Assembly: GCA_977030845.1 (NCBI GenBank)
Contig: OZ365115.1
Coordinates: 31,186,001 to 31,250,000 of the forward strand
Direction: 5' to 3'
Source: Fimbriosthenelais zetlandica
Lineage: Eukaryota
Length of the DNA stretch: 64,000 nt
In this document: positions 365 to 40,792 of the stretch, one piece after another
Layout: the number at the start of each line of letters is the position of its first letter
Position numbering within the stretch: position 1 is the first letter of the stretch
The notes under the pieces: generated by a model
What the model saw: only the letters and a program-made list of their open reading frames with translations
What the model was told of the DNA's origin: nothing
Databases searched by the model: none
Made by a program: the position numbers and the translations under genes

Positions 365-489
365 CTCAGGATCCGCTTGCAATGGGTACACTTGAAACAC
401 ATCTTGTGATAGATGTTTTTGTCGGCGATCATTTTTTCCATCTCGTAGACACGCTTGTCACAGAGGGCACAACGGTTATCCCCAGCTCC
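365..489 (-). CDS. LIM-domain exon (first zinc knuckle and start of second), EPLIN/LIMD2-type
   Basis: Acceptor tgttgttttcag, donor GAG|gtacca, 125 nt, phase 0 to 2. Encodes GAGDNRCALCDKRVYEMEKMIADKNIYHKMCFKCTHCKRIL(S) = C-x2-C-x17-H-x2-C-x2-C-x2-C, six of eight LIM ligands. VY.ME..IADK..YH..CF.C..C resembles LIMD2/LIMA1 LIMs as I recall them. Missed by the ORF track. Confidence 0.92.
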
Positions 490-10599: not shown

Positions 10600-12552
10600 C
10601 TACCAGGCAGGGGGGACTTCTCAAAACATGCAAAAGAGCCGAATCAAAGATCTATTCGAAAACCTAGAGAAAAGCAAAAAAAGTTCCTCCTCGAATGAAT
10701 TAGATCTTTTAACTCGAGTTGTTTGGTCCGAAAATGTGCAAGAGGCACTCTTACTGATCCAAATAATTTAGGGTTGACTACATCAGACGAGAAAAGCAAA
10801 ATTCAGATTAGCAATGCATAAAAGTTGTTGTGACCAATGAGAAAGAAAAATGTTGGCATTTTACAGATTAAAATTCTTTTCTAAGAAGTATAGTGGGAGT
10901 GGAGGGGAGGGTACTGCAGAAGGCATGGCTAGACTGGTATTAGATTTTTTAACCTGCTCTGAAGAAACTGGCATTGGGGCTGCTACAGCGCTTCCACACA
11001 TTCCCTAGTCATTGAGATGAATACGAAAGATCCGGTGGAAGAAAGAAATCATTCCTCACACTTGACTGAAACCATCTATTCAACTTGACCTCAATGGAGG
11101 CCAAGGTCATTGCTAGGGAAACACCATGCCTGGGCCCCAGTGCCCTCCCCCAAACATTCACCCCTCTGGCCAACGCCTCCGACTATGGCACTCCCTTGGT
11201 ATTATCTTTCACTTTATCGTCTTGATTTATACTATTGCTAATCTTTTTCACTTTTCATTGCTGCTGTTATCACTGGTGGTCTGCCATGTAGGCTTGCTAG
11301 GCATTTCTTTTACTCTGCTGCGCTCACTGACTAGCGTCCTGATGCCAGAAAGTCTTGGGGAATCTTTTTAGAAAGTATTTCCCCTTTCTTAAGCTTCAGG
11401 AATATTATTTTAGTTTGAGGTGCTGGCATCGCCTCACTCCTCAAACAAAATCCTTCTGGAGTTTCTCTCTGACAAACTCAGCAGACTGCTTCGATATCAG
11501 AGTGAAAACCATTGTGTTTGTCCCAGTCAGGATACACAGGAAGGTGGGACAAAGTTAGTCTGAGAATAGTCTCTTAAAGTGTCAAAACATTTTTTTTCAT
11601 GCCGAATTGGTATTTCTGGAGGTTTTCTCGCTCATCTCAGTTCAATAGGTGAAGTTGTCTATGACATTGAGAAGCTGTTTTAGGTCTTAATTACATGAGG
11701 TCTCGAGGCATAATTTGGTAAGGAATGAGAGTATGGTTATGCACGGTAAGGTGTCAGGGTCGGGGTGGGCAGAATCCAGCCGGATGATCAAAACGGTGGC
11801 ATTCACCACCAAAACGACCAATGTAGACCGGCAGGACTCTTGCATCAACAATATATGATAAATATAGATATATAATATATGGGGAGCACACAGGGTTATA
11901 AAACAATCCAGGGTTGAAGCAGAATCTGCCCTGTGCCCCAACCCGCCGAACTGTACATGAAACCATAGGGTATGCACCCTGACATGGCCACATTCCCTCA
12001 CCCTTGGAAGAGCCTCTAGTCATTCAAAGTGGAATCATGGGATCATCACTTCTTTATTTGACACTGGTGCGGAGAAAGATGTCTGTGCTGTTCTGGCAAC
12101 ACAGATTGCATCTTTCACCAGCCTGTTCATGGGAGAATGGGTACATCGGTAGAGGCATGGCATCTTCCAGATTTCTGGTTTTGGGAAATTGTATTTTCAA
12201 CCCAAACAGATGGGAACATGCATCGCTGATTAGAACTTCAATTGCACTTCACTCAGTATGCCTAACTTTCTTGTGAGAATGTATTGATTTAATTTGATTA
12301 TGTACAATCACGGTCTGTCCTTTCCAGCAAAGTGGCATCCTCCAGCTGAGGGAGACATCCATGGTAGTTAAAGAAAAACAAGGACCGGGGCGGACCGGAC
12401 GATGAGGTTGATTGATAATAGGAAAGTAAACACTTGTATTTAACTTGGTGATACATGTAGAAAACCTATTGCTTTGGAGGGCTGATGAAGGTGAGAAGAA
12501 GGCGTAGGCAGGCCTAAGGCATGCCAACTATCTCATTGGTATTTCACTGGCA

Positions 12553-12565
12553 GTTGCTAGGCAAC
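12553..12565. promoter_or_regulatory. RFX X-box-like site
   Basis: GTTGCTAGGCAAC, with an inverted CCAAT (attgg) ~15 nt to the left. Confidence 0.45.
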
Positions 12566-14271
12566 ACATCTGGATCATGACTCAGCAGAATCTTCCAGTT
12601 TCTTTCTGCCACACTCGACAGATTCAAGATGGATCCAGGGTTGAAAACAGTGATTCTCTTCATGGTTTGCTACGTTCAACTTCTTAAAATTTTGGTGAAA
12701 TATGATTTAGGTAATCGCCTATACACTACAATATTCAATGTCATCATACTTGTCAGTATAGCTAGACAATTCGTGAGTAATTGAATATTGTAATGTATAA
12801 ATGTCCTAAAGAGAAATTTTCAGTCGTCTGTATAAACTTTGATCTTCAAAATGTAATGAATTTTCCAAAAACTTTTGGTGTTACAATGCGTGCAGCAATA
12901 GTGTGAAAATCCTTTCTTGCCAATTCAATTCCAGCTTTACTAATTTTCTCAGAATATCTATGGCAGTACTAAACAGATCTTTCAAGTTAACTTCCCTCTT
13001 TCTTTTTCATAAATAAAGGTTAGTCGAACTAAGAGAAGAAAGCTGGATGGTTTTTAGTATGAACATTTTTTTGTAAACTTTTTCCTCTAATTGCATAAAA
13101 GCATAAAAAGTCTAGAAATAAATAACCGACTGAAGCTTGAATATAATATTGAGAAACGTTGAACAATTGAAAAAAATAATACAAAAGTAATTACAAGTAT
13201 AAAATTGACCCATGCACGATGCCTGCTTCCAAACTTTTTTCATCAAGAACACGTGGGACCCAGTTTTGCCCGGGGATCCCTGGGGTTAATTTCAATCTAT
13301 TAAAAACATCCTTCAATTTCTCATCTCTCACACCCATTTTTCACTCCCAATTTATTTAGGAACATCTAATTTGAGGGGTTCTTCAGGTTCGGAAGGGCCA
13401 AGTGTCTAGATATTTAAAGCAAAGTTACCCCAGGAACCCGTCCATGGCCAGAAAGGGTCTTAACCACTGTGTCCAGCTAAAGGTTTCAGTTTCACTTTTT
13501 TCCACAATAAATGTACAAAATATGCAGGCGTCCCGAAAAGCCATAAGTGGCACTCTGTTTTGTTTGTAATTCAAGGCCACGCAAAATTATATACCGACCC
13601 CCAAAGGAACAGAAGTGATCATGGATTTTCTTTCTCTCTGAAATGTCAATGAAAGGATGGGGCTACAATGGAAAGATGAATGAAACATATGCAGTCTACC
13701 CATATATATAATATGAATCAAGGTCCAATTTCTGTGCAAAAAATGCAAATGATATTTTTGACATAGAATGATGTCACGTAACGCAGTATCCATTTGCAAT
13801 ATGGCCCAAAATGAACTTTTCGATGGAAGTTTTTCGGGAAGCCTGTTTAGGAGATATACATATTATGTTTCCTCTTAGTTTGTCCTAAAGTCACTCCAGA
13901 TTGACGGAGAATCGATCAAAAGCCAGCTCACCTTTGATCAGAATATTAAACCCATCATTTTTAAGATAATTTTTCCATTTAATAATACTGTCACTTTTTT
14001 TTTACACAAACCCCTGAGGTATGGTAAAAGGCTTATCTAGTGTGGCAATCCTAAGTCTATGGGAACTCGGGAAAACAATGGAATCTTTTGGAAAACAATG
14101 AAAACTTGAAACAGCTGATGTTAGAAGCTGTGATGGTACGGATCTTGGCAGATAGATGTCTGATGTTACTGACAAAATGTTCATCTCGATGATACTAGTC
14201 CCCACAGGTTTCACATGCCACATCTAAGTCAACCCTTCCCTCCTCAACTTCCTCCTCGCCCGGTAACATAC

Positions 14272-14426: not shown

Positions 14427-14696
14427 TTATGTGAAGACAAGAGTCGCAGAGGACTTTACACTCTGCGACTTAGGAGCAGGTTGTGGAGCGACCTTTCTTC
14501 TTTCGGTTCTTTGTGCACGCTTCTCAGTTTTCTGGGGGGTGCCCTGCGACAGAGAAATGGTTTCAGATGTATCGAAAGATGCTGAAGCATCTACATCATT
14601 TGCTGGTGGTTCCGAGAGCGTGATACTTTGGTAAGACTGCGTTGTTTCCCCATGAGGGGGTGGGGAGTAATCACGTGGGGGAGTGAATCTAATAGG
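14427..14696 (-). CDS. Pro/Ser-rich exon: terminal to TAA 14427, or internal via donor at 14460
   Basis: Strong acceptor gtttaatttttacag; 89 open codons PIRFTPPRDYSPPPHGETTQSYQSITLSEPPANDVDASASFDTSETISLSQGTPQKTEKRAQRTERRKVAPQPAPKSQSVKSSATLVFT*. Weak phase-0 donor AGT|gtaaag. Not in the ORF track. Confidence 0.7.
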   Translation of the reverse strand, partial: PIRFTPPRDYSPPPHGETTQSYQSITLSEPPANDVDASASFDTSETISLSQGTPQKTEKRAQRTERRKVAPQPAPKSQSVKSSATLVFT

Positions 14697-17660: not shown

Positions 17661-19532
17661 CTATCTGAACAATGACACCTTTGGCTTATTGCCAGGTGTA
17701 TTCATCTTATTGCCAGGAGTATTCATTTTCCCTGCTGGCTGTGCCTTCTTCTTACGAATATTCATCCTTCTAGATTCTTTTTCTTTCTGTTCTTCTGCCT
17801 GTTTCTTTTTTAATTCAGCTTCTTCCCTTTCCCTCTTTTCTATATCTGCCCTTTCCAGTTTAGACTTCCTTTCTCTCTCAAACTTTTGCTTAGGGGTTTC
17901 ATTGGGATTGTAATGCACATCTTTCTCCGCCGCGCGGATGGCACGTTTCAGTTCACCTCCACCTTTGCGTACCTCAGGTATATATCTGCGTTTTTCCTGT
18001 AGTTCTCTCTCAAGTTGTTCCTCCCGGGTCAGCCACATGGTTTTCAATTGCCTGGACATGTTGGAGGGAATAAGCTCTTCCTGGGCCTCATCTGGAGCAA
18101 TATCAGCCTCACGGATGACGCCTTCACGGTACTCTGGCTCATTCTCATACACCCCACCATTACCCTGGCTTTCAATTTCTTTGATCCATGTTGGGACATC
18201 TCCTTGGAAGTCCATTGTGGTTCTGATCTTCTGGTGATCCTCTTCATGTTTGCGCCATCTCTGGTGAAGGTTGCGAGCAGCTCCCTCTTCCACACGCACC
18301 TCACACTGATCTGGTGTGAATTCATCACAGCGGATTATATCTGCACTGCGTTCAGCAGGCGTGTTCTCCACCACGCCAGCTTCACTCGCCATTTCAATCT
18401 CGATCATGCCCTTACGCTGACCGTCATCACCCCTAGAGGGACTGACGAACCTACCGGCAATGCTCTTGATTCTTCCGGGAGCACCTGGAAGCATTACGTC
18501 CTCCGTTGGTGCATCACAACGGATGACGTCATCCAGAATGACCGGCTCATTCTCAAGCACACCTGCCTCTGGTGCAAGATCCATTTGGAACGGCCCCTTT
18601 CTTGGTCCGTCATCTTTCATGTTCTGCCATCGGCTGGCAAGGTTGCGGGTGCGGCCCTGTTCAAGTGCCAGTTGAGCATCCACATCTTGCACATCCGACT
18701 CACGCACAACATCTTCCCTGGTGGTGGGTTCACTCTCAAGCACGGTAACGTTGCTACGATCAATGACAATAGGAGCTTTTTCTTTCCTAGTGTCGTCTGA
18801 TACTCCAGCAAAGAAACCTGCCACGTTGCGAATGTATCCTGGTTCATAACTCATCTGCTCCTCCTCGAAGTCTGACCTGACCACATCTGGCCTTGGTGCA
18901 GTAGGTGCGTTCTCGTAGACGACTGGTTCATTTTCATTCTCTACTAGTTTGATTGGACCTCTCTCTAGTTTCTTCTCCTCTGGATACAGGAACTTGAAGC
19001 GCAGTTTATCAGTGTGACCATCTTCTGGAGCCCGGACTTCTTCCATGACATCCTGCTCACGGATGACATTGTCAAGACGAATGGGCTGGTTCTCAGACTC
19101 AGCTGGACCACTCTGGCTGGTATCGATCTTGATTGTAGACATCTTGGCTTCTGTTATTCTACCAGCTGTGATGTCCTTCCAAGCATGTACAATGTTCTTT
19201 GTGGTGCCCTCTTCTAGAACCTCGCCAGTAGTAACCTCATCTGACTCACGTACAACATTGTCTCTCTGGGTGGGCTCGTTTTCATACACTCCAGCTTCTG
19301 GGGCGTCGTCGCGGATGATCTCGATCTTATTTGGTCTCTTCTGTAGATCTGGTAGTTGACCTGTCTCGAAAAGCTGTCTCATAGACGACGCAACTTTAGG
19401 GGCCTGAAGTTTCTCTACAATTACTTTGTTGATAGGTGTCCCCACAGGAACTCCGTAGCGGTTTACGGGTCCACGTGGGGCATATTCCCCTTGTAGGTGG
19501 GTGTAATCAGAACCAACTTGGAAGTATTCAGC
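17661..19532 (-). CDS. Large repeat-encoding composite exon (internal to 17973, or terminal to TAG 17661)
   Basis: 627-aa ORF whose real start is the acceptor cttgtcttttcag|GCT at 19532 (phase 0). In-frame donor GAG|gtacgc at 17973 gives 1560 nt = 520 codons. Read-through adds a 103-aa K/E/R-rich tail. Confidence 0.92.
   Translation of the reverse strand, partial: AEYFQVGSDYTHLQGEYAPRGPVNRYGVPVGTPINKVIVEKLQAPKVASSMRQLFETGQLPDLQKRPNKIEIIRDDAPEAGVYENEPTQRDNVVRESDEVTTGEVLEEGTTKNIVHAWKDITAGRITEAKMSTIKIDTSQSGPAESENQPIRLDNVIREQDVMEEVRAPEDGHTDKLRFKFLYPEEKKLERGPIKLVENENEPVVYENAPTAPRPDVVRSDFEEEQMSYEPGYIRNVAGFFAGVSDDTRKEKAPIVIDRSNVTVLESEPTTREDVVRESDVQDVDAQLALEQGRTRNLASRWQNMKDDGPRKGPFQMDLAPEAGVLENEPVILDDVIRCDAPTEDVMLPGAPGRIKSIAGRFVSPSRGDDGQRKGMIEIEMASEAGVVENTPAERSADIIRCDEFTPDQCEVRVEEGAARNLHQRWRKHEEDHQKIRTTMDFQGDVPTWIKEIESQGNGGVYENEPEYREGVIREADIAPDEAQEELIPSNMSRQLKTMWLTREEQLERELQEKRRYIPEVRKGGGELKRAIRAAEKDVHYNPNETPKQKFERERKSKLERADIEKREREEAELKKKQAEEQKEKESRRMNIRKKKAQPAGKMNTPGNKMNTPGNKPKVSLFR
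17685..17726 (-). repeat. 21-nt in-frame tandem duplication (MNTPGNK x2)
   Basis: cttattgccaggtgtattcat / cttattgccaggagtattcat, one mismatch. Confidence 0.9.
18033..19295 (-). repeat. Seven degenerate ~60-aa protein repeats
   Basis: E(N/S)xP motif at ORF residues 88, 151, 211, 270, 331, 393, 467, each followed by (R)x(D/N/G)(V/I)(V/I)R(E/C/S)xD and a G-x2-(R/K)(N/S)(L/I/V)-x2-(R/A/F)(W/F) element. Confidence 0.88.
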
Positions 19533-20647
19533 CTGAAAAGACAAGAAAATTCACACATAAGTCTTTGAATAAATTGCAATAATATATTATGTAAATATCT
19601 ATAATTTATTTCCAAACTTATATTTAATAAGACAACCAAACAATAGAATAAGAATTAAAAGTATAAACCTATTAATTAAAAGAGGCAGCCTGGTATTAAA
19701 GACTTCAGACACTCGATCAAAAGTTTATATTAACAGTTCAATTGTTCAGGTATAATTCTTTAATATCACACCCACAGCCGAATGTTTATTTAGGGGGCTA
19801 CAATAATCAAGGATCATTTGTATGTTACTGACATTGATAAGCATCTGTAGAGCTGCTCAAAATTAAATTTACTCAGCCTTAAAGCATGATAGAATTTGGC
19901 CTACTTAATGAGAGTGGGTCAGAGCCATTACTCAAATCCTGAATGGTATAATTGATCATGCCTCATCCTCATTACCCCCTCCCTCCCCCACCACCCCGAC
20001 CCCTATCCTTTGCTGAGTGGAGAGAACAATATGGGAGACAAGCACTGGCATAGACTTTTGGCAAAAACATTAGCTCTTGACCCTTAAATTCACTAGGTTA
20101 CAAGTAGTGAGTGAATCAGTGATGCTTTCATTTCCAGCTGGCCTCAACTGCCTACAATATACCAGCACAAACCGCCTCAAACCGGAGTACTTATATGTGG
20201 ATGTGTAACTAAAAACTTCCAGGAGGCTGGCTATTTTTAGAGTATCTGCGTTGCACAGGAGGAGCGAGGTAGAACTGGTCCGGGGAAGAGCTACTCACAG
20301 ATGGTGGTGGGGAAATGGGAGAACACGCCAGCTACGACCAAGAGCTAGGGAAATTTCTAAGTTTCCCTGGATTTTAATCACGGAAACCTAACACTTGCAT
20401 GGCGATTTCTATTTGAATATTTACTAACTAATGTCTAAGAAGTCCTGGTGGCATATCTGATGTGTATTGGTGCGAGTGAACTGATTTTAATTGGTGTGAT
20501 AGCTAAGTTAAGAAGTGCGTCTGAAGTCTTTGGTACCGGCATGGCTTTGGTAGCCATGCCTCCTCATTCATTCCCACTTTAGAAATCATTCCAAATCAGT
20601 GTTGATTCTAGAGAAAATGGTGGAAAATAGTGAAGATAAACACTTAC

Positions 20648-22567: not shown

Positions 22568-22640
22568 GAGTGGGTCTTGGTGACGGTGGTCACCTGCCTC
22601 CCACCCTCGTCAATTTGCGTCGTCATGATTTGAGTCGTCC
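22568..22640 (-). CDS. 73-nt Thr-rich exon (G)TTQIMTTQIDEGGRQVTTVTKTH(S)
   Basis: Acceptor catgttgcttttcag, donor CTC|gtaagt, phase 1 to 2. Confidence 0.85.
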
Positions 22641-24831
22641 CTGAAAAGCAACATGTCAAGAGAAATGTTAATATCTTTAATTCCCGTACCCCTCCTAACT
22701 CCTGTAGAAGTTCGGCTCCGGAGAAGGAGGATTTGTTAAAATGGTGTCAGTAAACTTTTATCTTTAGAAAAGGTTATGGCCCAAAGACCTTGGAAATTAA
22801 ATAAATTTGAAGGAAAAAACAGAATAAGATGGTTGAAGGGAGTGATGTCTCATTCCATTCAGAGTAAGTCTTGACAGTCCATATAGAAACATATGAATAT
22901 GGAATAAACATGCATTACATATTCGTTTCAATATGAGTATCATCTTGAAATTTATGGCTTTTGGAATTATAATCAATTACGTTTCCTTGAATTCATCAAT
23001 TCAACTGAATTTTGAAATTTGAAAAAATGAATTATATAAAATGAATTTTGTTTATGCCTTCAACCAATCAATTCTGTTAAAATTAAAATAGATGCCGACC
23101 ATTTTCAGGGTTCTGCGCATTCCTCGTCTTGACTACAGCTGTAGATTGCTCCCTCAAAAAGAAACAAAGACACGCGATACGGCGCCATGCTTCTGCCCTG
23201 TGCACAACAGAAACATGAGAAAAAATCCATACGATGCATTCAAGTGTAAATTCTTGTCTGTCTCCTATGCCATTGATTGTGTTTCCCTTTAGGCATTTAA
23301 GCAGAATCCAGTTCCTGTTTGCGAAGATATGTGTTATCATTGTTTCCCTTCCTGTGACAATTGGTTTTTCCTTTTCCATATTTGTTTTCCTTATGTTTGT
23401 TTTCCATTTTGTTTCCTGTTCCATGTGTTTCAATTCCTCCTTGGTTTTAAGCAGTTTAAGTATGGCAATGTCATGAGACAGTTGGTTGGCAATATCATGA
23501 TCATGGGGACTTGTAAGTTAGTGAAGTCCACCCATAAGACAGCATTGTCAACCCCTCACCTAGACATGACCCACCATAACAAGACCTGCTAGTCCAGTCC
23601 CCAACCAACCGTCCAGTCACCCTGCCTCCTCACCAACCACCTCCAGCCATCACAAAATTGACTATCACTAAACCAGAGGAGGGAGATGTGGAGACAGAAT
23701 GACGGACCATTGAGATGATGGCTGAAACGGTGGATGATCCACAAAGCACAGTTCACGACGCAGCTTATCAGTGATAAAAGGAACTATGATATAACACGAG
23801 GGGAAAGGGAACTTAATCTGGGAGGAAACATTTTCACTCATCGACTTACACTTAGAGGATGGGCAAAATTTGAAAATTTCTATTGTTAGTTTTGTATACA
23901 ACACATGGATTGTTGTATTTGAAGATATGAGTAAAAAGAATAACAGGCTAGCCCTGTGAAGATCTGTGAAAATTGCCAAAATTTTGAGGATATAAAGTGT
24001 CACTATTTGGGAAATGGCTGTGATAAAATTATTATCTAGACTATTTCTAAAACGTCTAGTAAAATAGGAAACATGTTAAAGTAACTGGGTGTCCTTTTAT
24101 CACATAATAAGTAATGATACGGTTACGTCGCAGTGACAGCGGTTTAGATGCGCACGATTTTATATTTCAGACACGGTAGATCAGACTTTCCTTCTTAAAA
24201 AGTTATTCAATTAAGAAGTTTGTTTTGTATATTTGTCCTTTTTCGCCAAAGATGAATTTCGTTCAAATGTCCGAGGGTGATTGTCCAGGGAATCAAATAT
24301 TGGTAATCACCCTAATTTTGTTATTATTTTCAACCATTACACTTTCATCAAAGAACCACACTTGGGTTCAAATCAACTCATCATCGAATTTCAAACATGA
24401 TCTATGTTTGAATAAATAAAATCCGGAGTCTTTACAACAATCAAATTAAATCTACACATAAATCATAGTGAAGATTTTCACCCATACCAATGTTGGTCTC
24501 AATAAAGAGAAGACCTTTACAAGAAACTGAAGTGTTTTCACAATATACAGTTTCCTTCCATACTGACCTCCAGAGCATAGAGTAGGGTAAAATCCAAGCA
24601 TCGCTGGTCATGTGAAGTTTTCCCCAAACTTCAGAAGAAACTGCTGAGTTGGCACGTTTAACAACGACACTGATCCATCATTCACTCTCACCTCACACAC
24701 CACACACATACACATTGAACATTGTGTGACAATAATATTATACAGTTTGAATCAGATTTCAACTTAAAGATGATCAAGAAAGAAATCGAAATGAAAAGAA
24801 ATTAAGTGTTTAGAAATAGTTTTGAACTTAC

Positions 24832-24874: not shown

Positions 24875-27800
24875 CTGAAAAACAAATCGGCAAATATAAT
24901 TTATTTTTTCAGTCAAATCTCTTAATTCTTCACATTCAATGGTCATTTTTTGTTCATAGGTATCCACTGGATTCTCCGTTGGCCTTCATTTCACCTATAG
25001 GCATAACAATCGGTAAGAATAATCTTAACATTAATTCAATTTAATTAAAAAGTGTTCAAAACAACACATTGGGTTGCATTATGAGATTAATTTTTGGTAT
25101 ATATATTAGTGTTGCAAGTTGATTTTAAACTACGTACTTTACATAAATAATGGTTAGGCCTATACAATTTTAGAAGTGCTAAAGAAAAAGTTACACTTTT
25201 ACACTTATACTTATAAACAAATTATCGGCCAAGTTAATCTAGAAGCTTCTAACGGTTGACATAAAGAAAAATATACATCATCCATGCAGCAGTATATATA
25301 CACATAATGACACATACATGGAGAGACATAATTCAATGTTCTCAGTACACATACAAGAGTTTATACAAGGTACTGAGGATGAACATCGGTCATTATACAG
25401 CATTTCCTTACAAGGACATAGTGGGCGTGGCTAATTACAAATGATGGGGCGTGTCCTAGTACTAATCATTGGGGATTCTCATCATGTCTATTGGCAATTT
25501 GTTTCATAAAGCAAGGTTATGTTTCCCTGCGACACATATGGATGGATTTAAGTGATTTGAGGAAGCTGAAAGCGCGCAAGGAATTTTTTGAAGGAAGTCA
25601 AGAGTGAAAATATGTCCAAGATATGAATGAGGAGAATTTCTTAATGAACGAATAGTCGTATCAGACAGATAGCAGATAGTTCAATTTTCCGGTGAAATAT
25701 GAAACAAGTAAAAATTGTCCTTAGAAAGGGCAAAGGCGAGGTAATAACCTAATATAAGGGTTTTAAGGACTTGATAGTTGATTAAAAGGTGAAATTGATA
25801 TTCTCAAGAAAAAATACATTTGCCTATGTTTGGCTAAGTCTTTCATTTCCAAGGTTATAACGGAGCATACGGAAAACCGGAAGATATATAATACAAAAGA
25901 TTAGGCTATATTCTGAAGGTGATCAAGCATATAAGGTTCGGATGGACAGGTATGTTGTTTCTTTTTAGATAGTCCTAAATAGCTCCATGAATGTACAAAA
26001 GAGGGGAAATATAATTGAAAAGAGTTTTGTGAAAATTTCCTAAGATCCCAAACACAAATTGTTTGAAATTTTAGAAGCAATCTAAAATAATTTCTTACAT
26101 AACTGACTTCACAAGACAAAGAGACTTTAATAGATTTGTATTTATGATTTGCAAAAAGATCTGTTCACGTAATTTGAAGGAAATGCAAACAGTCACATAT
26201 TGACAACTGAGCACCAACTTTAGTTAATATGACAGACATTTAAATGACATTCTCAAGTATTTCATAATACTGAGAGTTTCGGTGTTCATGCAGATTATAG
26301 AAGGATATGTATATAGTAGATGTGTTTGAAATTTTAGAAGGACTTTTGCCTATGAGCCTACTGCACAAACAGGAGGGCTAGCTTGACAGTGCTTCAACCA
26401 AGGCCTTGTTAGAGGGAATCAGAAACTCTGGTGCGAAAATATCCATAGTTGTATATCCTTAATTTACTGACAAAGGTTTTCATCTGTTGTGAAATAAAAT
26501 GTGTTTTCCTGTGAAATTGCCTTAGAGACATTTCTTGTGCAATAAAAACAAGTGTTTCTAAGAAATTATTGGTAGCATTCCATAATATTTCTGCTGTCAA
26601 AAAATGATTACAATTCAAATATATGTCAAGAAAAATATTGTTCATATTCTTGAAATCAGTTGTAATTTATGGTTTCGTTTTCTTGTCAAATTATCAAGTT
26701 TTTGTGTTCAGCACCACAGTGGAACCCTAAGATCATCGAATGAATTAGTATGTTAAGGGCTCCAGGACCAAAGGTCACTCTTTGAGGCCCTTGTTGAACC
26801 ACTGAGGGAGGAGAGAGATATACAGAGCAGGTTACATGAAACGACAAACCTTCTGGTTAAGGCCCAGAAACGCTTTATATTCGGAGGGGGACAACCTACT
26901 TTTCTTTTTTTGAGTGAGAAAAAAAATGTAACATTGTTAGTTAAATTCCTAGAATTAATATTGTCAATGGAGGCTGAAGATAGGGCACTACCCTCTTGTT
27001 AGTTATGGCAGATGAAAATATGTATATTGATAATTCATAGTACAAACATTATAATGAATATTTATGTCATATGGAACAAGAGATGAAAGGAACCTACAAA
27101 TGGAGAAATGAAATATTATGCTGGCATGAAGAAATATCTGTCCGAAATCATTGCACGTGTAATAATATCTTAGGACTAAATGTTCCCATAAAGGACAACA
27201 GCAATCTTACATGATAAATGATTAATAGATCATGATATCACAGATATTTCATAAGATATTTTTGTATAAGCAAATTGTATGTACAGATGTTTCATGTTGT
27301 AATTAGTTACATTTGAAGGATGTAATATGTAAATGGTTTCACCTAAAGGTTAAAGCACATCATTCTAAGGGGTCAAACGCCTTTTTATAATCATCTGAGG
27401 AATAAGGGTGATGGTTGACCAATCAAATATATTCTACAACAGGGAAAAATCAAGGTTGATAAAATGTACAAGTTGCAGATAATACTACTGAGTCTGGATA
27501 TTTCAATTGACAAGTCCCACAGAATTGCTGTGAACCTGGAGAAATTAAGTATTCAAAGATGGCAGACAACAGGCATATGATTGACCGATCAGAGATCAAT
27601 CATAACTATCTAAATCCAATCTATTTTCGCCACCAGATCAGGAAAAACTAAAATGTTTATAAACATGAAACCTAAGACCACACCTACACCAATGAGCCAA
27701 CCCTGACGCGCATTTTTGGAGGATAAGTTTTCAACGTGGACTTCACTGATATTTCTAGGCTGGGTGAAAAAAACTCATGTGAAATATGACCATTCCCAAT

Positions 27801-34063: not shown

Positions 34064-35644
34064 GTGTCTTCCCTTGACTATGAGCGAGAAGGGGAAAATA
34101 CAGAGAAAAATGCTAAGACATCTATGTATGGACTGCTTTCAGACAAAATACACAGCTATGTCACAGTACACCTTAAAACTGGCCTGAGATTTGTGTTGAG
34201 TGGCTTTGAAACAACAGATTTTGTTTGTTATTATAATACAACGAAGCTAGAGACTCGCTACCTTAGATCAGTGATAACTGATGCAGAAACCAGTTATTAT
34301 TTGATTTTCATTCCATGTTCTTTCTGATCATATTATATGACTATTTTCCTATCAAGCTGGTGGGAATTGAGAGGAACAACAAATAAAAAGACTTGTACTG
34401 GCAATTCCTGTAAACAAGTTTAACTATTAAACCGTTTGTACACTGGGGAGGAATTCTGCTGAGGTAAAATTCTGGGGAGATGAAATGCTAGTGTATGTTT
34501 TAGGGAAAGTCTTAGGGATCTATACTGAAAGATTTATAAATTCTATTTTCAGCACCTTACGAAAGAAAAACTGCACAGGTGTGGTGCAAAAAAAAATGAA
34601 GTGAAGAGTAATGTGTGTTTTAATGATGACCTGAGGGAAAATACACTGCAAAGCACTTGGGTGTTACAGGTGGATAAATATTAAATCTTTTCTGGGTATT
34701 TATATTTTACTTAGGCGAAGGTTCTTCACTCAGTGCAGGAACACAGAATAATATTGTGTATTTCAAGGAAAATGAGTAAAATTTTGTGAGAAAATAATAT
34801 ACCAAGAAGCGATATATTTGACGGATTTTGTGAGTATTTGCAATTGAAAATATGAATACGTATGTAAACTTACATAGTGCTAATTTGATGCATTTAAAAA
34901 TGAAAGTCAATATTAGCATGTATGGATGGGTATGACTGAAAATTGTTGTCCTATAATATTGCTAGCAGGGGTTTATTTATAAGCTTTCTACGTTCTCCAT
35001 ATTTTACGTAAACACTTGAAACCAAATTCATCCACATAACATAAAATGTTCTAATCATTTTGATAAAATTCCTTTCCATAAAATTGTAAGAAAGATTAAA
35101 ATAAAAATCTTAAAAAATCAGCCCTTAAAACCGAAAGCCTAACTTGAGTAAGGGTTCTACTTAAAGGGTTGAAAGCTAGCCTTGCCTCTAGGTTTATATA
35201 CCTTGTTCTGGCGAGGACTGCCCGGTTCCGAGATTGTCAAAGGTGGTGGTCTAAGGGGACCACTTTTTGGAAACTCCAAAACAGGTCTTTTAGGATTTTC
35301 CTCTTTCTGTTTCACAGAAAATCAAAATTAATTCTAAGTAATACAGTGAAAAGTGATAAAAAATGTTACCAACAATTACTGAAATGTTTTGTTACAATGT
35401 ATGTTAGCATTAAAATTAAATGCAAAGTTTTATCTCAGATGATTAAAGAATTGAATGATCAAAAGCTGAACTATTTATGTCAAACTTAATTTCTTCAAAT
35501 TTTCTTCAAATAAGGCTTATTATATCGGTCATCAACTTAAATAATTATATTACATTTTCATAACTCTTACTTCAGGGCTATCTTAAAAACAATTGGTAAA
35601 AATGAGTAAAATGTGTGATTTATCTGCTCTGAGTTGTAGCCTAC

Positions 35645-36688
35645 CTCTTTAGAGGGACAATCATCATCTGCCCACCAAGCTCTCTGAGGCTTTGGGTGGT
35701 CCCACTTATCCCCTTCATCACTTTGGTCTTGTGTAAATTGATCAGGGTCACATGACAGCACTGCAGAGTCTCTGGGAGTTGTCATATTCTCGTTTTCTTC
35801 ATTGTTCTGAAGTGCAGAATGACTTGCATCCTGATTTTCATCAGAATCAAGTTCTAACTTAGATTTTTCATTTCGCACTTTATCTTTCAGAAGGTTATCA
35901 TTGCCATTATGAGCTTCTAATTTCCTATCTCCAACATTTTCCATCTGAGATTTCTTTTCCTTTACTTCAACTACCTGACCCTCCTCTTCAGAAGCGATCT
36001 TTTCTACAGTAACACTTGCAACTGAAACACCAGGTACTGTAGTATCAGAGGCAGCATTTTGAGTGTCAATGTCATTTGAATCTTTAACCAAAGGATCTGA
36101 TGACACCAATAACGAACCGGCATCTACAGTGTAGGTCCCACCAAATATCTTACTCCTATTAACCGATGCTTCAGCCTCGTCATCTGAAGACTCAGACATT
36201 GAATGATTAGAATGTAAAAATTTAAAAGAAGGCGTATGTGGTCTAAAATGCTTTGAACTGCTTTGGTTTGAACCCGCGGCAATATTGTACTCTCCATCTG
36301 TGGAAGATGGCGTGATGGATTGCTCACTTTCGGTTTCACTATCGCCGTTATTGAGCACAGCCTTTGGTGGAACCGCAAAGGAAGCATCATCAACGGGCAA
36401 CTGACTGTCTGTACCCAACCCGTCACTTAGGTCAGAACACTGACTAGATGTTTTAGATCTACGCTTTGATTCATCAAAATTGGTAGCTTCAGTTGGAGGC
36501 ATTCTGCCTGCTGGCCCTATGTGAAACACTGCAGTGCTGACTTGATTGTGAGAGCCTGTCATGTCTCTAGTTACATGGGTTCCTTCAGGGACTGTTGGGT
36601 GATTTACTTGTGGAGTGTATTGTGTGGATGATGTTGGTTTGTGTAGTTTGTTTGTGTTGGTCTCAAGTAAATGGGTGTTGCTCCCAGG
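35645..36688 (-). CDS. Large Ser/Asp/Glu-rich cassette exon (348 codons, phase 0-0)
   Basis: 375-aa ORF in AT-rich DNA; acceptor ttttctttctctgcatgcag|CCT, donor GAG|gtaggc. Flanking exons join in frame without it. Confidence 0.78.
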
Positions 36689-37922
36689 CTGCATGCAGAG
36701 AAAGAAAAGGCCAATAATGATGTCAATATGATGGGTGATTAGGATGTAGGATGTAGTTTTAACCCTTATGATCTTAAATAAATACTTGTTACAAGTTATC
36801 AGTTAAAATCTACAGATACATCACTGGGGAGAGTATACATATAAATACAATATACGGTTATGTGTTATGGGTAAGAATCCTGAAGGGTATATTAAATTCT
36901 TATTTGTTGCAAGACAAGACTCCACAGACAAGAAAGGGTGGGAAATGACAGAAGGAAATCTGTACAGGAACAGGTAGAGGATAGTACACAAATCTGTAGA
37001 CATTTAAAACATTTGTATAAAAGAATTCTGTTCCTGGAACAGTTTGCATTGAGTATATATATCATAATCAACATATTTAAAGCCAGTGATTTTCACTATA
37101 AATACAAGATGGAAGGCTTAAGAAGCATATATAATTTGCTGAGATCATGAAGCATTAACTTAGCGATGGCTATATTGTAAGTATAATACAACGCATCACA
37201 AAGCAATATATATGGGAAAGGTTGAAATGTGCAAGTTAATCAATTACCAACTTCTTCAAACTAGCAAGATTGAAGAAGCAGCCTATAGAAAAGGTGTGTT
37301 CATTAAACAACGTATCATTGCCCAAGCATCTTACTGGTGTGTGCCATTAACTTATGGTGTTAAAACCAGAAACTAGTATTTTCATTTTACCAACTGGCAG
37401 GCACCCTTGCTTTCAAAATCCAATGCTTACCTAAAAATTCAAGTGGTTGATTGCATTGTATCAGTATATTATCAAAATTGTTCTCTGTGTGAGAGAAAAA
37501 AGTCATGGCAAATGGCTATAGCCAACAGTGGTCAATATAGAAGGAACAAGAATTGTGAAAAACCTGAACGCATCATCATCCCTAATGCGCGGGATGATGG
37601 AAAGAGGGGAAATATGGAAATGTGAAGCCGTCAACAGTCAGGCTCCATCTTCTGCATTGACCAACATATTCTACTGTGTAAATCCTAGTTGATATGTTTA
37701 TTATTGAACGACACTATCCAGGCCCGCTTTGGAGGGACTGGATATCATTCAAACGTTGGTTACTTTAGCGTGTTTTTGAAACTATTATTACGGTCAAATG
37801 CATCAGAATGAGAGCCATGTTTTGCGTTCCGTCCATGTAAGTTGGATTAATATAACAAGTCATAGTATTAATCTGAGTAAAGAGGTATTGAACCGGGGGC
37901 TGCAGGTTCTTGCTTTCTGTAC

Positions 37923-38066: not shown

Positions 38067-39961
38067 CTACGGTTCATATCGATACATAGGGTTAACATTT
38101 TATCATAGGTGTCATTGACAGTGACAGTGTATCAATTCTCCTGTGACATTAGTTCATTGAAATAAAATGTTCCTTGTCAGGTCACACAATCTGATTAGTA
38201 ATTGGAATAATCAGGGTCTAAGACCCTTCCTTTGGGTAGGGGATTTATGTGAAATTTAACAATCCTGAAATGAATTAACAATATGACAAGGTTCTATGCT
38301 GATCACACACATCATTGAGGTGTTCAGGAAAAATCCACTCCGAAGAGCTGAGAGAAAAATCTAGACACACATTAGTGAAAACCGTGGGTCACACCGTCAC
38401 ACTGCAGTTACTTACATCATCTAATGTACGCATGCCATTTCCCTGATTACAGTATTTCCAAGGAAAATAGGGAGATCACGCTAGGTGTGTGGACATTGGC
38501 TATCACAGCTGATCAAGAAAGTAAATTAGTTTCATTTTGTCTGATGTGGTCACACTCATGGTAAAAAACACATGGTTCTGATTCTGCATTGTGATGCAGA
38601 TCATGTTGAGGGAGTTTCGGATTCACATCTGGAGAATGGGTACAGATCTTGGTCACTCTGGAATTGGGCTATAGAAGGAAGAGGACTGACGGAATTTCCA
38701 GGATGAATGGATGATTTCGAGGGGAAATGGGGGCTGTGTCAATCTTTCCTAACCTTTGTTGTTTTGCGTACAACTGTAACAGTTCGTCGACTCCACTGAT
38801 CCCCTGAGGGGGCTTGAGGGGGTATAGGCCCCTGGCTCTGAGAGGTAAAGTTAACACAAGATTAACAATTATTTCTATTCATACTTTAACATTAAAAGAC
38901 ATCAATGTAAAAGAGAATGGGAAAGAGAGGAGAGCAGAGGACACACTGCATCCATCGGTACTCTAGGGTAGCAGTTATATTGAAGAGAATTATTGTGACT
39001 ACATCAAGACAAGATAGGGCATAGTTCATCCTCAGTTTCTGCTGTTCATCAAAAAGATGAATGACAGTAGATTCAGCTAAATATGTAACTTCATCACATG
39101 AAACCGACAAAACTGAACATGCAATCTGAGAGCTAAACACCAACGATGACAGCATGCAAAACACTAAAGTACCGACAAGCATGAAAATATCTCAAAGCAA
39201 TTAAGACTCATCAATGAATGATAATGTAACAACAATTTGGCAATGAAAACAAAATAATAGCAAAACAGTGATAACGGTATATTGATATGGACAACACCTG
39301 AAATTAAATGAAAAGGAAAGAATAAGTTGATTAGCATCTATAATCACAGATAATTATTTTTTTTCACCATGAATATCCGCAGAAAAATATAGCAAACAGC
39401 AAGAGAGACAACACTGAGAAAAAGAAAAGAAACTCCACGACAATGAAAGCAAATTCTAAGACGAAAGAGATGCAATTCACCATCACGTTTTAAATTGAGT
39501 CACACCATAGATTTAGCTAGCTAAATTCATTCTGAAAACATGTAACATTTACTAGTAAGTCTGCTATCCCTAATTAATTCTCACAAAGGAACTGAATAAA
39601 ATGTGAAGGAAATCAATGATTTTCTATGAGAAAGCATTGATATTTTTAGTGGCTAGCTAAACCCATGATGTAGAAGTGATGGCTATGCCAGGTGATTAAA
39701 TAAAGATCCAGACATATCCATGGACAAGAGGTGCAGAGAGATGATATAAATGGACACAAAGAGGACTGAAGCAAGAGCAGGCACACAATCTGCACGATGG
39801 TCGCCATTACAATACCAAAGATGACGAGGAATAGAAGCAGCAGAGAGATGTGCATGAGAAGGACTAGAGGAACCAGTATCAGGGTTACCAAGATACCAGT
39901 ATTCAAGCTACCAGCATCCTAGTTCTGACCCTTCAACTTCATGTTGACAGCTTCCACATAC

Positions 39962-40792
39962 CGGTTTGATGGTTCGAGATGGGGTACCTTCTGGAGAACG
40001 AGCGTAATCATAACCAGTGATCTTGTGACCGATCGCGACTGGGGATCTCTTGGGTGGTTCTTCTGGGGAAGGTGATTGTTCAGCCTGGGGTTCAAACCTC
40101 GAGGGTTGTGAAGGTGTCACTGATTCTACCCTAGCTTCTGGTTCAGGTTCAGGTTCTGAGTCTGATTCCGTGGCTGGATTCTCAGCCTCTAGATCTGATT
40201 CTATATCAGGTTGATTGTCTATATCGTCATATTGATGGTCAGGGCTGGGTGTCCTGGGGATCGGGTTGGCAGGGCGTTCTGGCTCAGGTTCGTATTGTCC
40301 ACCTTGCCGCTGTGCAACAAGTTTTTCCCTCTCTTCATCTATTCTCTCTTGTTCTTCGTCTAACTGAGCAGTGTGCATCTCTACCATCATCTGAAGCTGG
40401 CTGATCTGAGACATGGGAGATAAGTCAAATTCAGCGTCCTCCATTTCTGCTCTTGGTGCTTGTGCTTCACCAAAATCAGCCAGCATGTCTTCATAGGCAG
40501 CTTCAGCAGTGCTATGTCTCTCACTGGGGGGTGAGCCAGAGGCAGATAGACTGAGACTTGTTCTCGACGTGTGAGTGCCATTCTCCCCCTGTTGACTGGA
40601 CAGATCACCTTCCATTGCTTCACGGTCACCTTTCTCTTTATACTCGTCATCGTCGTCATCCTCAACGACGTCTTCGACGTCAGAGTTGGGGGAAGCGGGA
40701 GAGTATGTGATGACAGCGTCAGTGGTGGTGTTTGTGACGTCAGAGTGGGTAGCTACAGAGGAGGCAGCAGCGGCGACAGCAGCAGCAGCAGC
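39962..40792 (-). CDS. Acidic/Pro-rich exon with a short coiled-coil-like stretch (277 codons)
   Basis: 325-aa ORF; strong donor CCG|gtatgt at 39962. Acceptor either ccacag (40792) or attcag (40876), both phase 0. Confidence 0.85.

What the first reader, a model, noticed from the sequence alone, without database searches (positions are those of the whole stretch)
18033..19295. Seven-copy ~60-aa repeat I cannot match to a named domain, in an EPLIN/Xin-class protein
Each unit has three parts: G/P-V-(Y/L/V)-E-N-x-P...(R)-x-D-V-V-R-E-x-D; an amphipathic G-x2-RNL-x2-RW helix; and a K-x-P-I-x-I linker. Spacing is 59-63 aa except the last (74). A lone helix copy (VASSMRQLFE) precedes unit 1. Known: vertebrate Xin proteins bind F-actin through short tandem repeats, and EPLIN bundles actin. 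Inference: this is an analogous, distinct actin-binding or filament-spacing repeat.
Basis: partly seen in the sequence, partly recalled or inferred. Interest (0 to 1): 0.7.

Follow-up and report, generated by a model that had tools for sequence, protein, structure and literature searches.

The report
Unnamed seven-unit repeat in invertebrate EPLIN
One exon of an invertebrate (probably annelid) EPLIN/LIMA1-type LIM gene encodes seven copies of a ~60-residue, mostly disordered repeat that is conserved in at least nine animal phyla, matches no catalogued domain, and most likely binds actin filaments, which is untested.

Summary
The minus-strand exon 19532..17973 encodes seven tandem units (window 19295..17976) with spacings of 63, 60, 59, 61, 62 and 74 aa. 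Each unit scores 23-45 bits against a profile of the other six; 1000 shuffles reach at most 12.6 bits.

Each unit has three parts:
- motif A, G-V-phi-E-N-x-P-x2-R-x-D-V-V-R, with E and P nearly invariant in 1187 units;
- an acidic spacer followed by an amphipathic helix, G-x-A/T-K/R-N-L-x2-K/R-W/F;
- a K/R-x-P-I-x-I linker.

A unit profile finds 483 protein clusters. Named members come from annelids, molluscs, brachiopods, nemerteans, bryozoans, flatworms, rotifers, hemichordates and a crinoid. Full-length members carry one EPLIN-class LIM domain, and all are annotated as uncharacterised or misnamed ("titin-like").

There is no Pfam match (Xin and nebulin included), no PDB sequence match and no Foldseek match. 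AlphaFold predicts one helix per unit and disorder elsewhere. Against a 70%-identical orthologue the array has pN 0.16 and pS 0.80.

So this is a real, uncatalogued repeat family in the invertebrate EPLIN orthologue. Actin binding is inferred from gene family, array architecture and a Lifeact-like helix register. Homology to Xin repeats was tested and not supported. The same stretch was noted once more by this scan (s1-184642), with no follow-up.

The parts
17973..19532 (-). Repeat exon, constitutive part: 520 codons, phase 0 at both ends. Acceptor ttttcag|GCT at 19532; internal donor GAG|gtacgc with GT at 17972-17971.
   Evidence: Sequence read. The acceptor and the coding frame are conserved in orthologue locus L001. 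Whole-exon pN is 0.18 against pS 0.78.
19335..19412 (-). The family consensus is EKVAPPEI-T-K-N-V-R-x-M-F-E-S/T-G.
   Evidence: Conserved just before unit 1 in annelid-like, molluscan and hemichordate homologues. AlphaFold predicts a helix at exon aa 46-57. The unit profile aligns it only weakly (-1.9 bits).
19107..19295 (-). Unit 1 (exon aa 80-142); helix at aa 110-123.
   Evidence: Family profile 60.1 bits, i-E 2e-17. Leave-one-out 40.8 bits against at most 9.0 in shuffles. Helix.
18927..19106 (-). Unit 2 (aa 143-202), the most degenerate copy (AESENQP; helix TDKLRFKF); helix at aa 173-182.
   Evidence: 45.1 bits, i-E 1e-12. Leave-one-out 23.2 against at most 7.9.
18750..18926 (-). Unit 3 (aa 203-261); helix at aa 233-243.
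   Evidence: 43.8 bits. Leave-one-out 30.8 against at most 6.8. Its best partner is unit 3 in all 8 annelid-like orthologues compared.
18567..18749 (-). Unit 4 (aa 262-322); helix at aa 294-303 (GRTRNLASRW).
   Evidence: 55.9 bits. Leave-one-out 45.4 against at most 12.6.
18381..18566 (-). Unit 5 (aa 323-384); helix at aa 355-363.
   Evidence: 42.6 bits. Leave-one-out 36.7 against at most 8.6.
18159..18380 (-). Unit 6 (aa 385-458), the long copy with a 12-aa insertion in the linker; helix at aa 418-434.
   Evidence: 49.0 bits. Leave-one-out 32.7 against at most 11.4.
17976..18158 (-). Unit 7 (aa 459-519). Its helix (aa 490-516) runs on to the exon's internal donor.
   Evidence: 47.5 bits. Leave-one-out 27.2 against at most 10.1. 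Helix H461-487 of the model.
17661..17972 (-). Read-through tail: Lys/Glu-rich, 103 aa plus the stop at 17661-17663. It would give a LIM-less isoform if the internal donor is skipped.
   Evidence: Open frame. It is 56% identical to the orthologue, with the last ten residues and the stop conserved; pN 0.28 against pS 0.72. No RNA data could be examined.
14460..14696 (-). Next downstream exon (PIRFTPPRDY...), acceptor tttttacag|CCT. The 3' end is approximate.
   Evidence: Sequence. It is phase-compatible with the donor at 17973. It matches the region after the array in P0031 and P0013 and is collinear and conserved in L001.
365..489 (-). Exon for the first half of the EPLIN-class LIM domain (GAGDNRCALCDKRVYEMEK...CTHCKRIL). 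The rest of the gene lies beyond the window start.
   Evidence: LIM pattern scan; splice sites read. tblastn gives 41-59% identity to the LIM regions of Mercenaria, Owenia, Ptychodera, Tubulanus and Anneissia homologues.

Best explanation
**What it is (shown).** An old, protein-level tandem repeat in the invertebrate orthologue of EPLIN/LIMA1. One exon encodes seven units of about 60 residues. The units are intrinsically disordered and net acidic. Each is a string of three short linear motifs:
- motif A: G-V-phi-E-N-x-P-x2-R-x-D-V-V-R-E-x-D;
- motif B, after an acidic spacer: a 10-14 residue amphipathic helix, G-x-A/T-K/R-N/S-L-x-x-K/R-W/F;
- motif C: a basic K/R-x-P-I-x-I linker.

The array sits upstream of a single EPLIN-class LIM domain. 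It can also end in a conserved Lys/Glu-rich tail without the LIM.

**How it probably works (inferred).** The array is a multivalent side-binding module for actin filaments.
- Each helix would dock its hydrophobic face (A/T32, L35, x36, W/F39, x42) into the groove between two actin subunits of one strand, as Lifeact does.
- Motif A and the linker would make extended contacts that set the register.
- Many weak sites in series would give avidity, so the protein would decorate and stabilise filaments.
- Together with the LIM domain or a second array it could bundle filaments or tether them to junctions, as vertebrate EPLIN and Xin proteins do.
- Seven units may span seven actin subunits of one strand, but that is speculation.
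For: **Repeat reality and anatomy.** establish the units. The logo from 1187 unique units shows E5 at 100%, P8 at 99%, V/I3 at 93%, N/S6 at 99%, V/I14 at 94%, G30 at 79% and W/F39 at 92%.

**Selection.** In the array pN is 0.16 and pS 0.80 against a 70%-identical orthologue. Unit order is conserved for units 3-7 among 30-38% identical orthologues.

**Family range.** There are 77 homologues of the exon. The unit profile finds 483 clusters at E<=1e-3 and 107 at E<=1e-30. Named members span nine phyla.

**EPLIN class.** Full-length members carry one LIM domain and the window has a LIM exon. [quoted passage not shown] Koch et al. 2012 (PMC3305314) define the EPLIN class as Lima1, Xirp2 and Limd2, and describe its members as actin-bundling.

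**Structure.** AlphaFold predicts one helix per unit and low confidence elsewhere (pLDDT 53, pTM 0.18). With 108 aligned units the single-unit model reaches pLDDT 77, with a helix at residues 31-50.

**Helix register.** The hydrophobic positions i, i+3, i+4, i+7, i+10 are the same as Lifeact V3, L6, I7, F10, I13. Those residues bind the F-actin groove, and F10A or L6K abolish binding (PMC7717565).

**Weak support.** The language-model neighbours of the exon include several actin-associated disordered families: Xin, CRACD/DUF4592, DUF4757, Phostensin and Espin WH2. All score below 0.9.
Against: - No experiment or co-fold with actin was possible, so binding is purely inferred.
- Every unit is net acidic (-4 to -6) and actin is acidic too. 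Nebulin, Xin and tau-type side-binders are basic.
- The most conserved element, phi-E-N-x-P...D-V-V-R, resembles no actin-binding motif I know. Its near-invariant E and P look more like a peptide recognised by a folded domain.
- The i, i+3, i+4, i+7 register is generic for amphipathic helices.
- No significant similarity to Xin, to nebulin or to any other Pfam family.
- Copy number is not fixed at seven: 6-8 in hemichordates, 4-6 in flatworms and 12-26 in other members.
Confidence: 0.45

Rival explanations
1. The array is a scaffold of docking peptides for a partner other than actin. Motif A (G-V-phi-E-N-x-P...D-V-V-R) would be recognised by a folded domain of a junctional, muscle dense-body, myosin or signalling protein. 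The array would recruit up to seven copies of that partner to actin structures, which the protein reaches through other regions or through the LIM domain.
For: Motif A is the most conserved part of the unit, with E at 100% and P at 99% in 1187 units. That pattern is typical of peptide-domain recognition. In the single-unit AlphaFold model, residues 1-20 reach pLDDT 85-87 without regular secondary structure, as is often seen for conserved binding peptides. The units are acidic, which argues against simple electrostatic binding to acidic actin.
Against: No known linear-motif class matches motif A. This was checked from memory only (NPF, NPxY, pYxN, LD, PxxP and FPPPP motifs). The phi position is Y in only 18% of units, so a phosphotyrosine motif is unlikely. 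The helix and the linker are also conserved, and this idea leaves them unexplained. No partner was identified.
Confidence: 0.3
2. The array is mainly an elastic or entropic spacer: an acidic, disordered, PEVK-like spring that sets the distance between the N-terminal region and the LIM domain. The conserved residues would only tune stiffness.
For: The array is predicted mostly disordered and rich in charged residues: 95 Asp+Glu and 58 Lys+Arg in 440 aa. NCBI's automatic names for homologues are 'titin-like' and 'titin homolog'. Copy number varies from 4 to 26 between lineages.
Against: A spacer does not need near-invariant residues at fixed positions in more than 1000 units across nine phyla. 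It also does not need unit-by-unit orthology or pN/pS of about 0.2 with saturated pS. The 'titin' names are composition-driven; no titin domain is found.
Confidence: 0.08
3. The repeat is the ancestral form of the vertebrate Xin repeat and of the short G-x-L-x2-L-K-x2-W/F-E motifs of EPLIN. On this view it is a divergent member of the Xin family, not a separate family.
For: XIRP2 belongs to the EPLIN LIM class (PMC3305314), and a hemichordate LIM region of this family matches a bird XIRP2 at 45% identity. In ambulacrarian members the helices read G-G-L/A-K-S-L-K-D/N-R/K-F-E-K-G-E-V, and the pre-array motif reads K-N-V-R-x-M-F-E-T/S-G. These line up with the published consensus GDV(K/Q/R/S)xx(R/K/T)WLFET(Q/R/K/T)PLD (PMC2478706) at G1, hydrophobic 3, K4, basic 7, F10 and E11. 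The best-scoring register puts Xin F10 on the unit's W/F in 47% of units.
Against: Pfam Xin (PF08043) does not match at E<=10, even in proteins with 17-26 units or in ambulacrarian members. The sliding score against the Xin consensus is 10.7 +/- 5.2 in real units and 9.9 +/- 5.1 in shuffled ones. The unit profile finds nothing in 119 bird XIRP2 C-terminal fragments. Xin units lack motif A. Grosskurth et al. found no Xin repeats outside vertebrates. No sequence containing real Xin repeats, and no vertebrate LIMA1, could be fetched for a profile-profile test.
Confidence: 0.15

Closest known systems
[quoted passage not shown] 2012)
   Same: It has one EPLIN-type LIM domain followed by the GNYDEGFG 'Eplin motif' in full-length homologues and long disordered flanks. 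NCBI names one crinoid isoform LIMA1-like, and the Atlas places that protein nearest arthropod LIMA1 clusters. From memory, vertebrate EPLIN has single motifs such as G-T-L-x2-L-K-K-K-W-E that resemble helix B; this was not tested.
   Different: No repeat array of this kind is described for vertebrate EPLIN. Here the flank is a regular array of 6-8 (up to 26) units with motif A, which I could not look for in vertebrate sequences. The LIM lies C-terminal to the array here and in molluscs, but N-terminal in Owenia, hemichordates and the crinoid.
Xin repeats of XIRP1/XIRP2 (Pfam PF08043)
   Same: Both are tandem arrays of short, unstructured units in an actin-associated protein whose LIM domain (XIRP2) is of the EPLIN class. 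The helix part shows a loose pattern match, G-x-phi-K-x2-K/R-x2-F/W-E.
   Different: The Xin motif is 16 aa. Arrays of 15-28 units span roughly 650-1000 residues (PMC2478706), which is about 36-44 aa per unit by my arithmetic. Xin repeats are reported only in vertebrates. This unit is about 60 aa, has motif A and linker C, is acidic, and is found in Spiralia and Ambulacraria. The Pfam Xin model does not match, and the consensus score equals that of shuffled units.
Nebulin repeats (PF00880) and other filament-ruler repeats
   Same: Many short units in series. A count of seven would echo the seven-repeat nebulin super-repeat and the seven actins per tropomyosin (textbook knowledge).
   Different: There is no sequence similarity and no Pfam match. 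Nebulin units are 35 aa, basic and helical throughout. The count of seven is modal here but not universal.
Lifeact / F-tractin-type F-actin-binding helices
   Same: A single short amphipathic helix with hydrophobic positions at i, i+3, i+4, i+7, i+10 and a central aromatic residue, corresponding to Lifeact V3, L6, I7, F10, I13 (one search compared).
   Different: Lifeact is a single 17-aa peptide from yeast Abp140, and homology is neither claimed nor tested. The register is generic for amphipathic helices.

Membership tests
EPLIN class LIM proteins (Koch et al. 2012) | A single LIM domain of the EPLIN type | tested here: met
   The first half of a LIM domain lies on the same strand downstream (window 489..365). 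It is 41-59% identical to the LIM regions of family members. Pfam LIM scores E 1e-8 to 1e-13 in full-length homologues. The second half lies outside the window.
EPLIN class LIM proteins (Koch et al. 2012) | Conserved 22-aa 'Eplin motif' directly C-terminal to the LIM | tested here: inconclusive
   ...F-K/A-S/R-K-G-N-Y-D-E-G-F-G... follows the LIM in the Mercenaria and Owenia homologues and in bird XIRP2. For this gene that part lies beyond the window start.
Xin repeat (Pfam PF08043) | Match to the 16-aa motif GDV(K/Q/R/S)xx(R/K/T)WLFET(Q/R/K/T)PLD or to the Pfam model | tested here: not met
   PF08043 does not match at E<=1 in the window exon or at E<=10 in relatives with 17-26 units and in ambulacrarian members. 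The consensus sliding score is 10.7 in real units against 9.9 in shuffled ones.
Xin repeat (Pfam PF08043) | F-actin binding that needs at least three repeats | not testable with these tools
   A biochemical property. The threshold of three repeats is from my memory of the Xin literature.
Nebulin repeat (PF00880) | 35-aa unit with the SDxxYK motif or a Pfam match | tested here: not met
   No Pfam match. No SDxxYK in the unit logo.
Any catalogued protein domain (Pfam-A copy, newest models 2025) | Score above a family's gathering threshold, explained by real homology | tested here: not met
   The window exon gives only sub-threshold noise. In the 26-unit relative P0078, PSP94 (28.1 bits, cutoff 22) and CIDE-N (26.1 bits, cutoff 23.5) pass on the summed score of many weak hits, with at most one stretch significant on its own. 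These are artefacts.
Solved or predicted folds | Sequence match in the PDB or a Foldseek match | tested here: not met
   Profile against PDB sequences: best E 1.1. Foldseek against the PDB: no match at E<=10. Against AFDB Swiss-Prot: best E 5.7 and TM below 0.5.
Lifeact-like F-actin-binding helix (functional analogy only) | Amphipathic helix with a hydrophobic face at i, i+3, i+4, i+7, i+10 and a central aromatic residue | tested here: inconclusive
   The pattern is present: A/T32, L/M/I35, 36, W/F39, 42, and the helix is predicted. The register is generic, and binding is untested.

The most novel reading that the evidence does not exclude
This repeat is the ancestral bilaterian actin-binding repeat of the EPLIN class. 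Vertebrate Xin repeats, and the isolated G-x-L-x2-L-K-x2-W/F-E motifs of EPLIN, would be shortened descendants of its helix motif. If so, Xin repeats were not a vertebrate invention tied to the chambered heart, as Grosskurth et al. 2008 proposed. [quoted passage not shown] A second reading is that the seven-unit array acts as a ruler matched to the seven-actin period of the thin filament.
Probability: 0.15. Interest if true: 0.75.

Novelty: new variant of a known kind. Interest (0 to 1): 0.55.

Why it matters
EPLIN and Xin proteins link actin to cadherin junctions, stress fibres and intercalated discs. How their disordered flanks bind filaments is poorly understood, and almost all work is on vertebrates.

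This family gives a regular, strongly conserved repeat with three well-defined motifs and an easy mutational handle (E5/P8, L35, W/F39). It occurs in at least nine invertebrate phyla. Databases currently label its members 'uncharacterized', 'titin-like' or even 'serine-rich adhesin'.

Defining it as a domain family would correct hundreds of annotations. It would make the actin-binding mode of the EPLIN class testable with a simple modular construct. It would also allow a proper test of where Xin repeats came from.

Tried and rejected
1. **Pfam.** I scanned the exon, eight full-length homologues, five relatives with 16-26 units and five ambulacrarian members, up to E<=10. Only LIM is real. The PSP94 and CIDE-N hits in the 26-unit protein are summed noise.
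2. **PDB and folds.** The profile against PDB sequences and Foldseek of the unit model against the PDB and AFDB Swiss-Prot found nothing.
3. **Xin hypothesis.** The Pfam model is negative and a consensus sliding test equals shuffles. It is rejected as a membership claim and kept only as a low-probability evolutionary lead.
4. **Vertebrate sequences.** I tried to fetch vertebrate LIMA1 or Xin-repeat sequences for a profile-profile test. The LIM-region search gave 4 hits. The follow-up search with a bird XIRP2 fragment listed only bird XIRP2 C-terminal fragments without Xin repeats. The unit profile does not hit them. The question stays open.
5. **DNA-level repeat.** Rejected.
7. **Literature.** Full-text searches for the motif strings and for invertebrate EPLIN found no description of this repeat.
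8. **Phosphotyrosine (pYxN) reading of YENEP.** Rejected because Y occupies that position in only 18% of units.
9. **Unit-by-unit orthology with molluscs.** Not supported. Whether seven units is ancestral or convergent between annelids and molluscs is unresolved.
Full report
**Observation**

The window is AT-rich animal DNA with long introns. On the minus strand a 1.87-kb open frame starts right after a good splice acceptor (ttttcag|GCT, exon start 19532) and runs to a stop at 17661-17663. Its translation holds seven E-[NS]-x-P motifs at residues 84, 147, 207, 266, 327, 389 and 463.

Aligning the seven units shows three parts:
- G/P-V-phi-E-N-x-P-x2-R-x-D-V-V-R-E-x-D;
- an acidic stretch followed by G-x2-K/R-N-L-x2-K/R-W;
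- a K-x-P-I-x-I linker.

The repeat is far beyond chance. A profile of any six units scores the seventh at 23-45 bits, while 1000 shuffles of that unit reach at most 12.6 bits. The family profile finds these seven units and nothing else in the six-frame translation of the window. There is no DNA-level tandem repeat, so the copies are old.

**Gene context**

- Inside the open frame, a strong donor (GAG|gtacgc, GT at 17972-17971) closes a 520-codon, phase-0 exon just after unit 7.
- The next exon (14696.., PIRFTPPRDY) is phase-compatible. It matches the sequence that follows the array in related transcripts and is conserved in the orthologous locus.
- Further downstream lie an exon at about 5141-5006 and the first half of a LIM domain at 489..365.
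- The read-through tail (17972..17664) is Lys/Glu-rich and also conserved as coding, stop codon included. A LIM-less isoform is therefore plausible, as another note of this scan proposed (s1-184664).

**Family**

The exon has 77 homologues in the 5.8-billion protein set. A profile of 108 units from diverse members (alignment A1) finds 483 cluster representatives at E<=1e-3 among 1.84 billion, and 107 at E<=1e-30.

Named members come from nine phyla:
- Annelida: Helobdella, Capitella, Owenia
- Mollusca: Haliotis, Gigantopelta, Babylonia, Magallana, Saccostrea, Mizuhopecten, Mercenaria, Mactra, Mytilus, Liolophura
- Brachiopoda: Lingula
- Nemertea: Tubulanus
- Bryozoa: Watersipora
- Platyhelminthes: Schistosoma, Trichobilharzia, Macrostomum, Cichlidogyrus
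- Rotifera: Seison
- Hemichordata: Ptychodera, Saccoglossus, Glandiceps
- Echinodermata: Anneissia

No chordate, ecdysozoan or cnidarian was among the 30 clusters I could name, but the 333 weaker hits were not listed.

All names are 'uncharacterized' or composition-driven misnomers: titin-like, serine-rich adhesin for platelets-like, abhydrolase domain-containing protein DDB_G0269086-like. [quoted passage not shown]

Full-length members carry one LIM domain followed by the GNYDEGFG motif that Koch et al. 2012 call the Eplin motif. A hemichordate LIM region matches a bird XIRP2 at 45% identity, the only vertebrate among four hits. The Atlas places the crinoid protein nearest arthropod LIMA1 clusters (0.91).

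The LIM is C-terminal to the array here and in molluscs, but N-terminal in Owenia, hemichordates and the crinoid. Some members have no LIM in the model, for example Helobdella with 20 units and metagenomic proteins with up to 26.

The modal copy number is seven: 71 of the 219 family proteins and fragments then in hand that carried at least two significant units, isoforms included. Spacing peaks at 60 aa, at about 67-70 aa, and at about 83 aa in bivalves.

**Conservation**

A logo from 1187 unique units shows:

| Position | Residues |
|---|---|
| 3 | V/I 93% |
| 5 | E 100% |
| 6 | N/S 99% |
| 8 | P 99% |
| 11 | R 56% |
| 13 | D 63% |
| 14 | V/I 94% |
| 15 | V/I 81% |
| 16 | R/K 84% |
| 30 | G 79% |
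| 32 | A/T 86% |
| 33 | K/R 86% |
| 35 | L/M/I 85% |
| 39 | W/F 92% |
| 52-57 | [RK]-x-P-[IV]-x-[ILV] |

Against a 70%-identical orthologue fetched as locus L001, the array has pN 0.16 and pS 0.80, the latter saturated. Among 30-38% identical orthologues, units 3-7 mostly find their best partner at the same index. That signal is absent against molluscs.

**Structure**

AlphaFold on the array with 37 orthologues gives mean pLDDT 53 and pTM 0.18. It predicts one 9-17 residue helix per unit at motif B (27 residues in unit 7, where it runs on into the tail), one at the pre-array motif, and a few extra short helices.

With the 108-unit alignment, a single unit reaches pLDDT 77: a helix at residues 31-50, and pLDDT 85-87 over motif A with no regular secondary structure. 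Foldseek finds nothing, and the profile has no relative among PDB sequences. The units are net acidic, -4 to -6 each.

**What it is not**

No Pfam family matches, Xin (PF08043) and nebulin included, even at E<=10 and in proteins with 17-26 units. I also tested the Xin idea directly with the published consensus (PMC2478706).
- The best-scoring register does put Xin G1 and F10 on the unit's G30 and W/F39 in 47% of units.
- The score itself (10.7 +/- 5.2) equals that of shuffled units (9.9 +/- 5.1).
- Ambulacrarian helices (G-G-L-K-S-L-K-D-R-F-E-K-G-E-V) and the pre-array motif look more Xin- and EPLIN-like by eye, but this is a lead and not a result.
- I could not obtain vertebrate LIMA1 or Xin-repeat sequences for a profile-profile test.

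**Mechanism**

*Shown:* a conserved, selected, disordered tandem array of three linear motifs in the invertebrate EPLIN-class protein.

*Inferred:* multivalent binding along actin filaments. The grounds are:
- the gene family; EPLIN-class proteins bundle and stabilise actin (PMC3305314), and XIRP2 carries tandem actin-binding Xin repeats (protein name; PMC2478706);
- the serial architecture;
- a helix whose hydrophobic face has the same register as Lifeact's V3/L6/I7/F10/I13, the residues that bind the groove between two actin subunits (PMC7717565);
- weakly, actin-associated disordered families among the language-model neighbours.

*Against:* the units are acidic, the best-conserved element (motif A) resembles no known actin-binding motif, and the helix register is generic.

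A scaffold for another partner is therefore a serious rival (0.3). A pure spacer is unlikely given the positional conservation.

**Verdict**

It is best described as a new repeat family, a new variant of the known kind 'tandem short repeats in actin-associated proteins', with a wide and previously unremarked phylogenetic range.

Noticed in passing
window 17661-17972 (-): The Lys/Glu-rich read-through tail after the internal donor is conserved as coding in the 70%-identical orthologue. It is 56% identical, with the last ten residues and the stop the same. This supports a LIM-less isoform.
   Followed up: partly
window 17685-17726: A 21-nt unit is repeated twice, giving GNKMNTP twice in the tail. 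The orthologue L001 has a different, shorter Thr-rich stretch at that place.
   Followed up: partly
window 14460-14696 (-) and homologues P0103, P0065: The motif K/R-F/I-T-P-P-R-D/E opens the next exon here. It also recurs inside the inter-unit linkers of the Owenia and bivalve homologues, where it seems to replace the K-x-P-I-x-I linker of this gene.
   Followed up: no
homologues P0065, P0096, P0097, P0103: Bivalve and Owenia arrays have a second, shorter phi-E-x-x-P half-motif between full units (for example KVEYESQP, GEFENQP). This accounts for their spacing of about 83 aa.
   Followed up: no
homologues P0069, P0070, P0077, P0103, P0234 versus P0065, P0092, P0098 and this window: Domain order is flipped between lineages. 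The LIM comes before the array in hemichordates, the crinoid and Owenia, and after the array in molluscs and in this gene. These could be two paralogues, a rearrangement or gene-model errors.
   Followed up: no
P0078 (26-unit relative): Pfam PSP94 (28.1 bits, cutoff 22) and CIDE-N (26.1 bits, cutoff 23.5) pass their gathering scores only because many weak per-repeat hits add up. This is a trap for automatic annotation.
   Followed up: partly
window 26844-26906, 22568-22645, 20171-20237, 12543-12605 (-): Short blocks are collinear with the orthologous locus L001 and 50-87% identical at the translated level. They may be micro-exons or conserved intronic elements.
   Followed up: no
window 39911-40897 and 35570-36802 (-): Two long stop-free stretches (329 and 411 aa, Ser/Thr/Asp/Glu-rich) lie upstream on the same strand. 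They may be 5' exons of the same gene. They have no match to the N-termini of the homologues tried.
   Followed up: no
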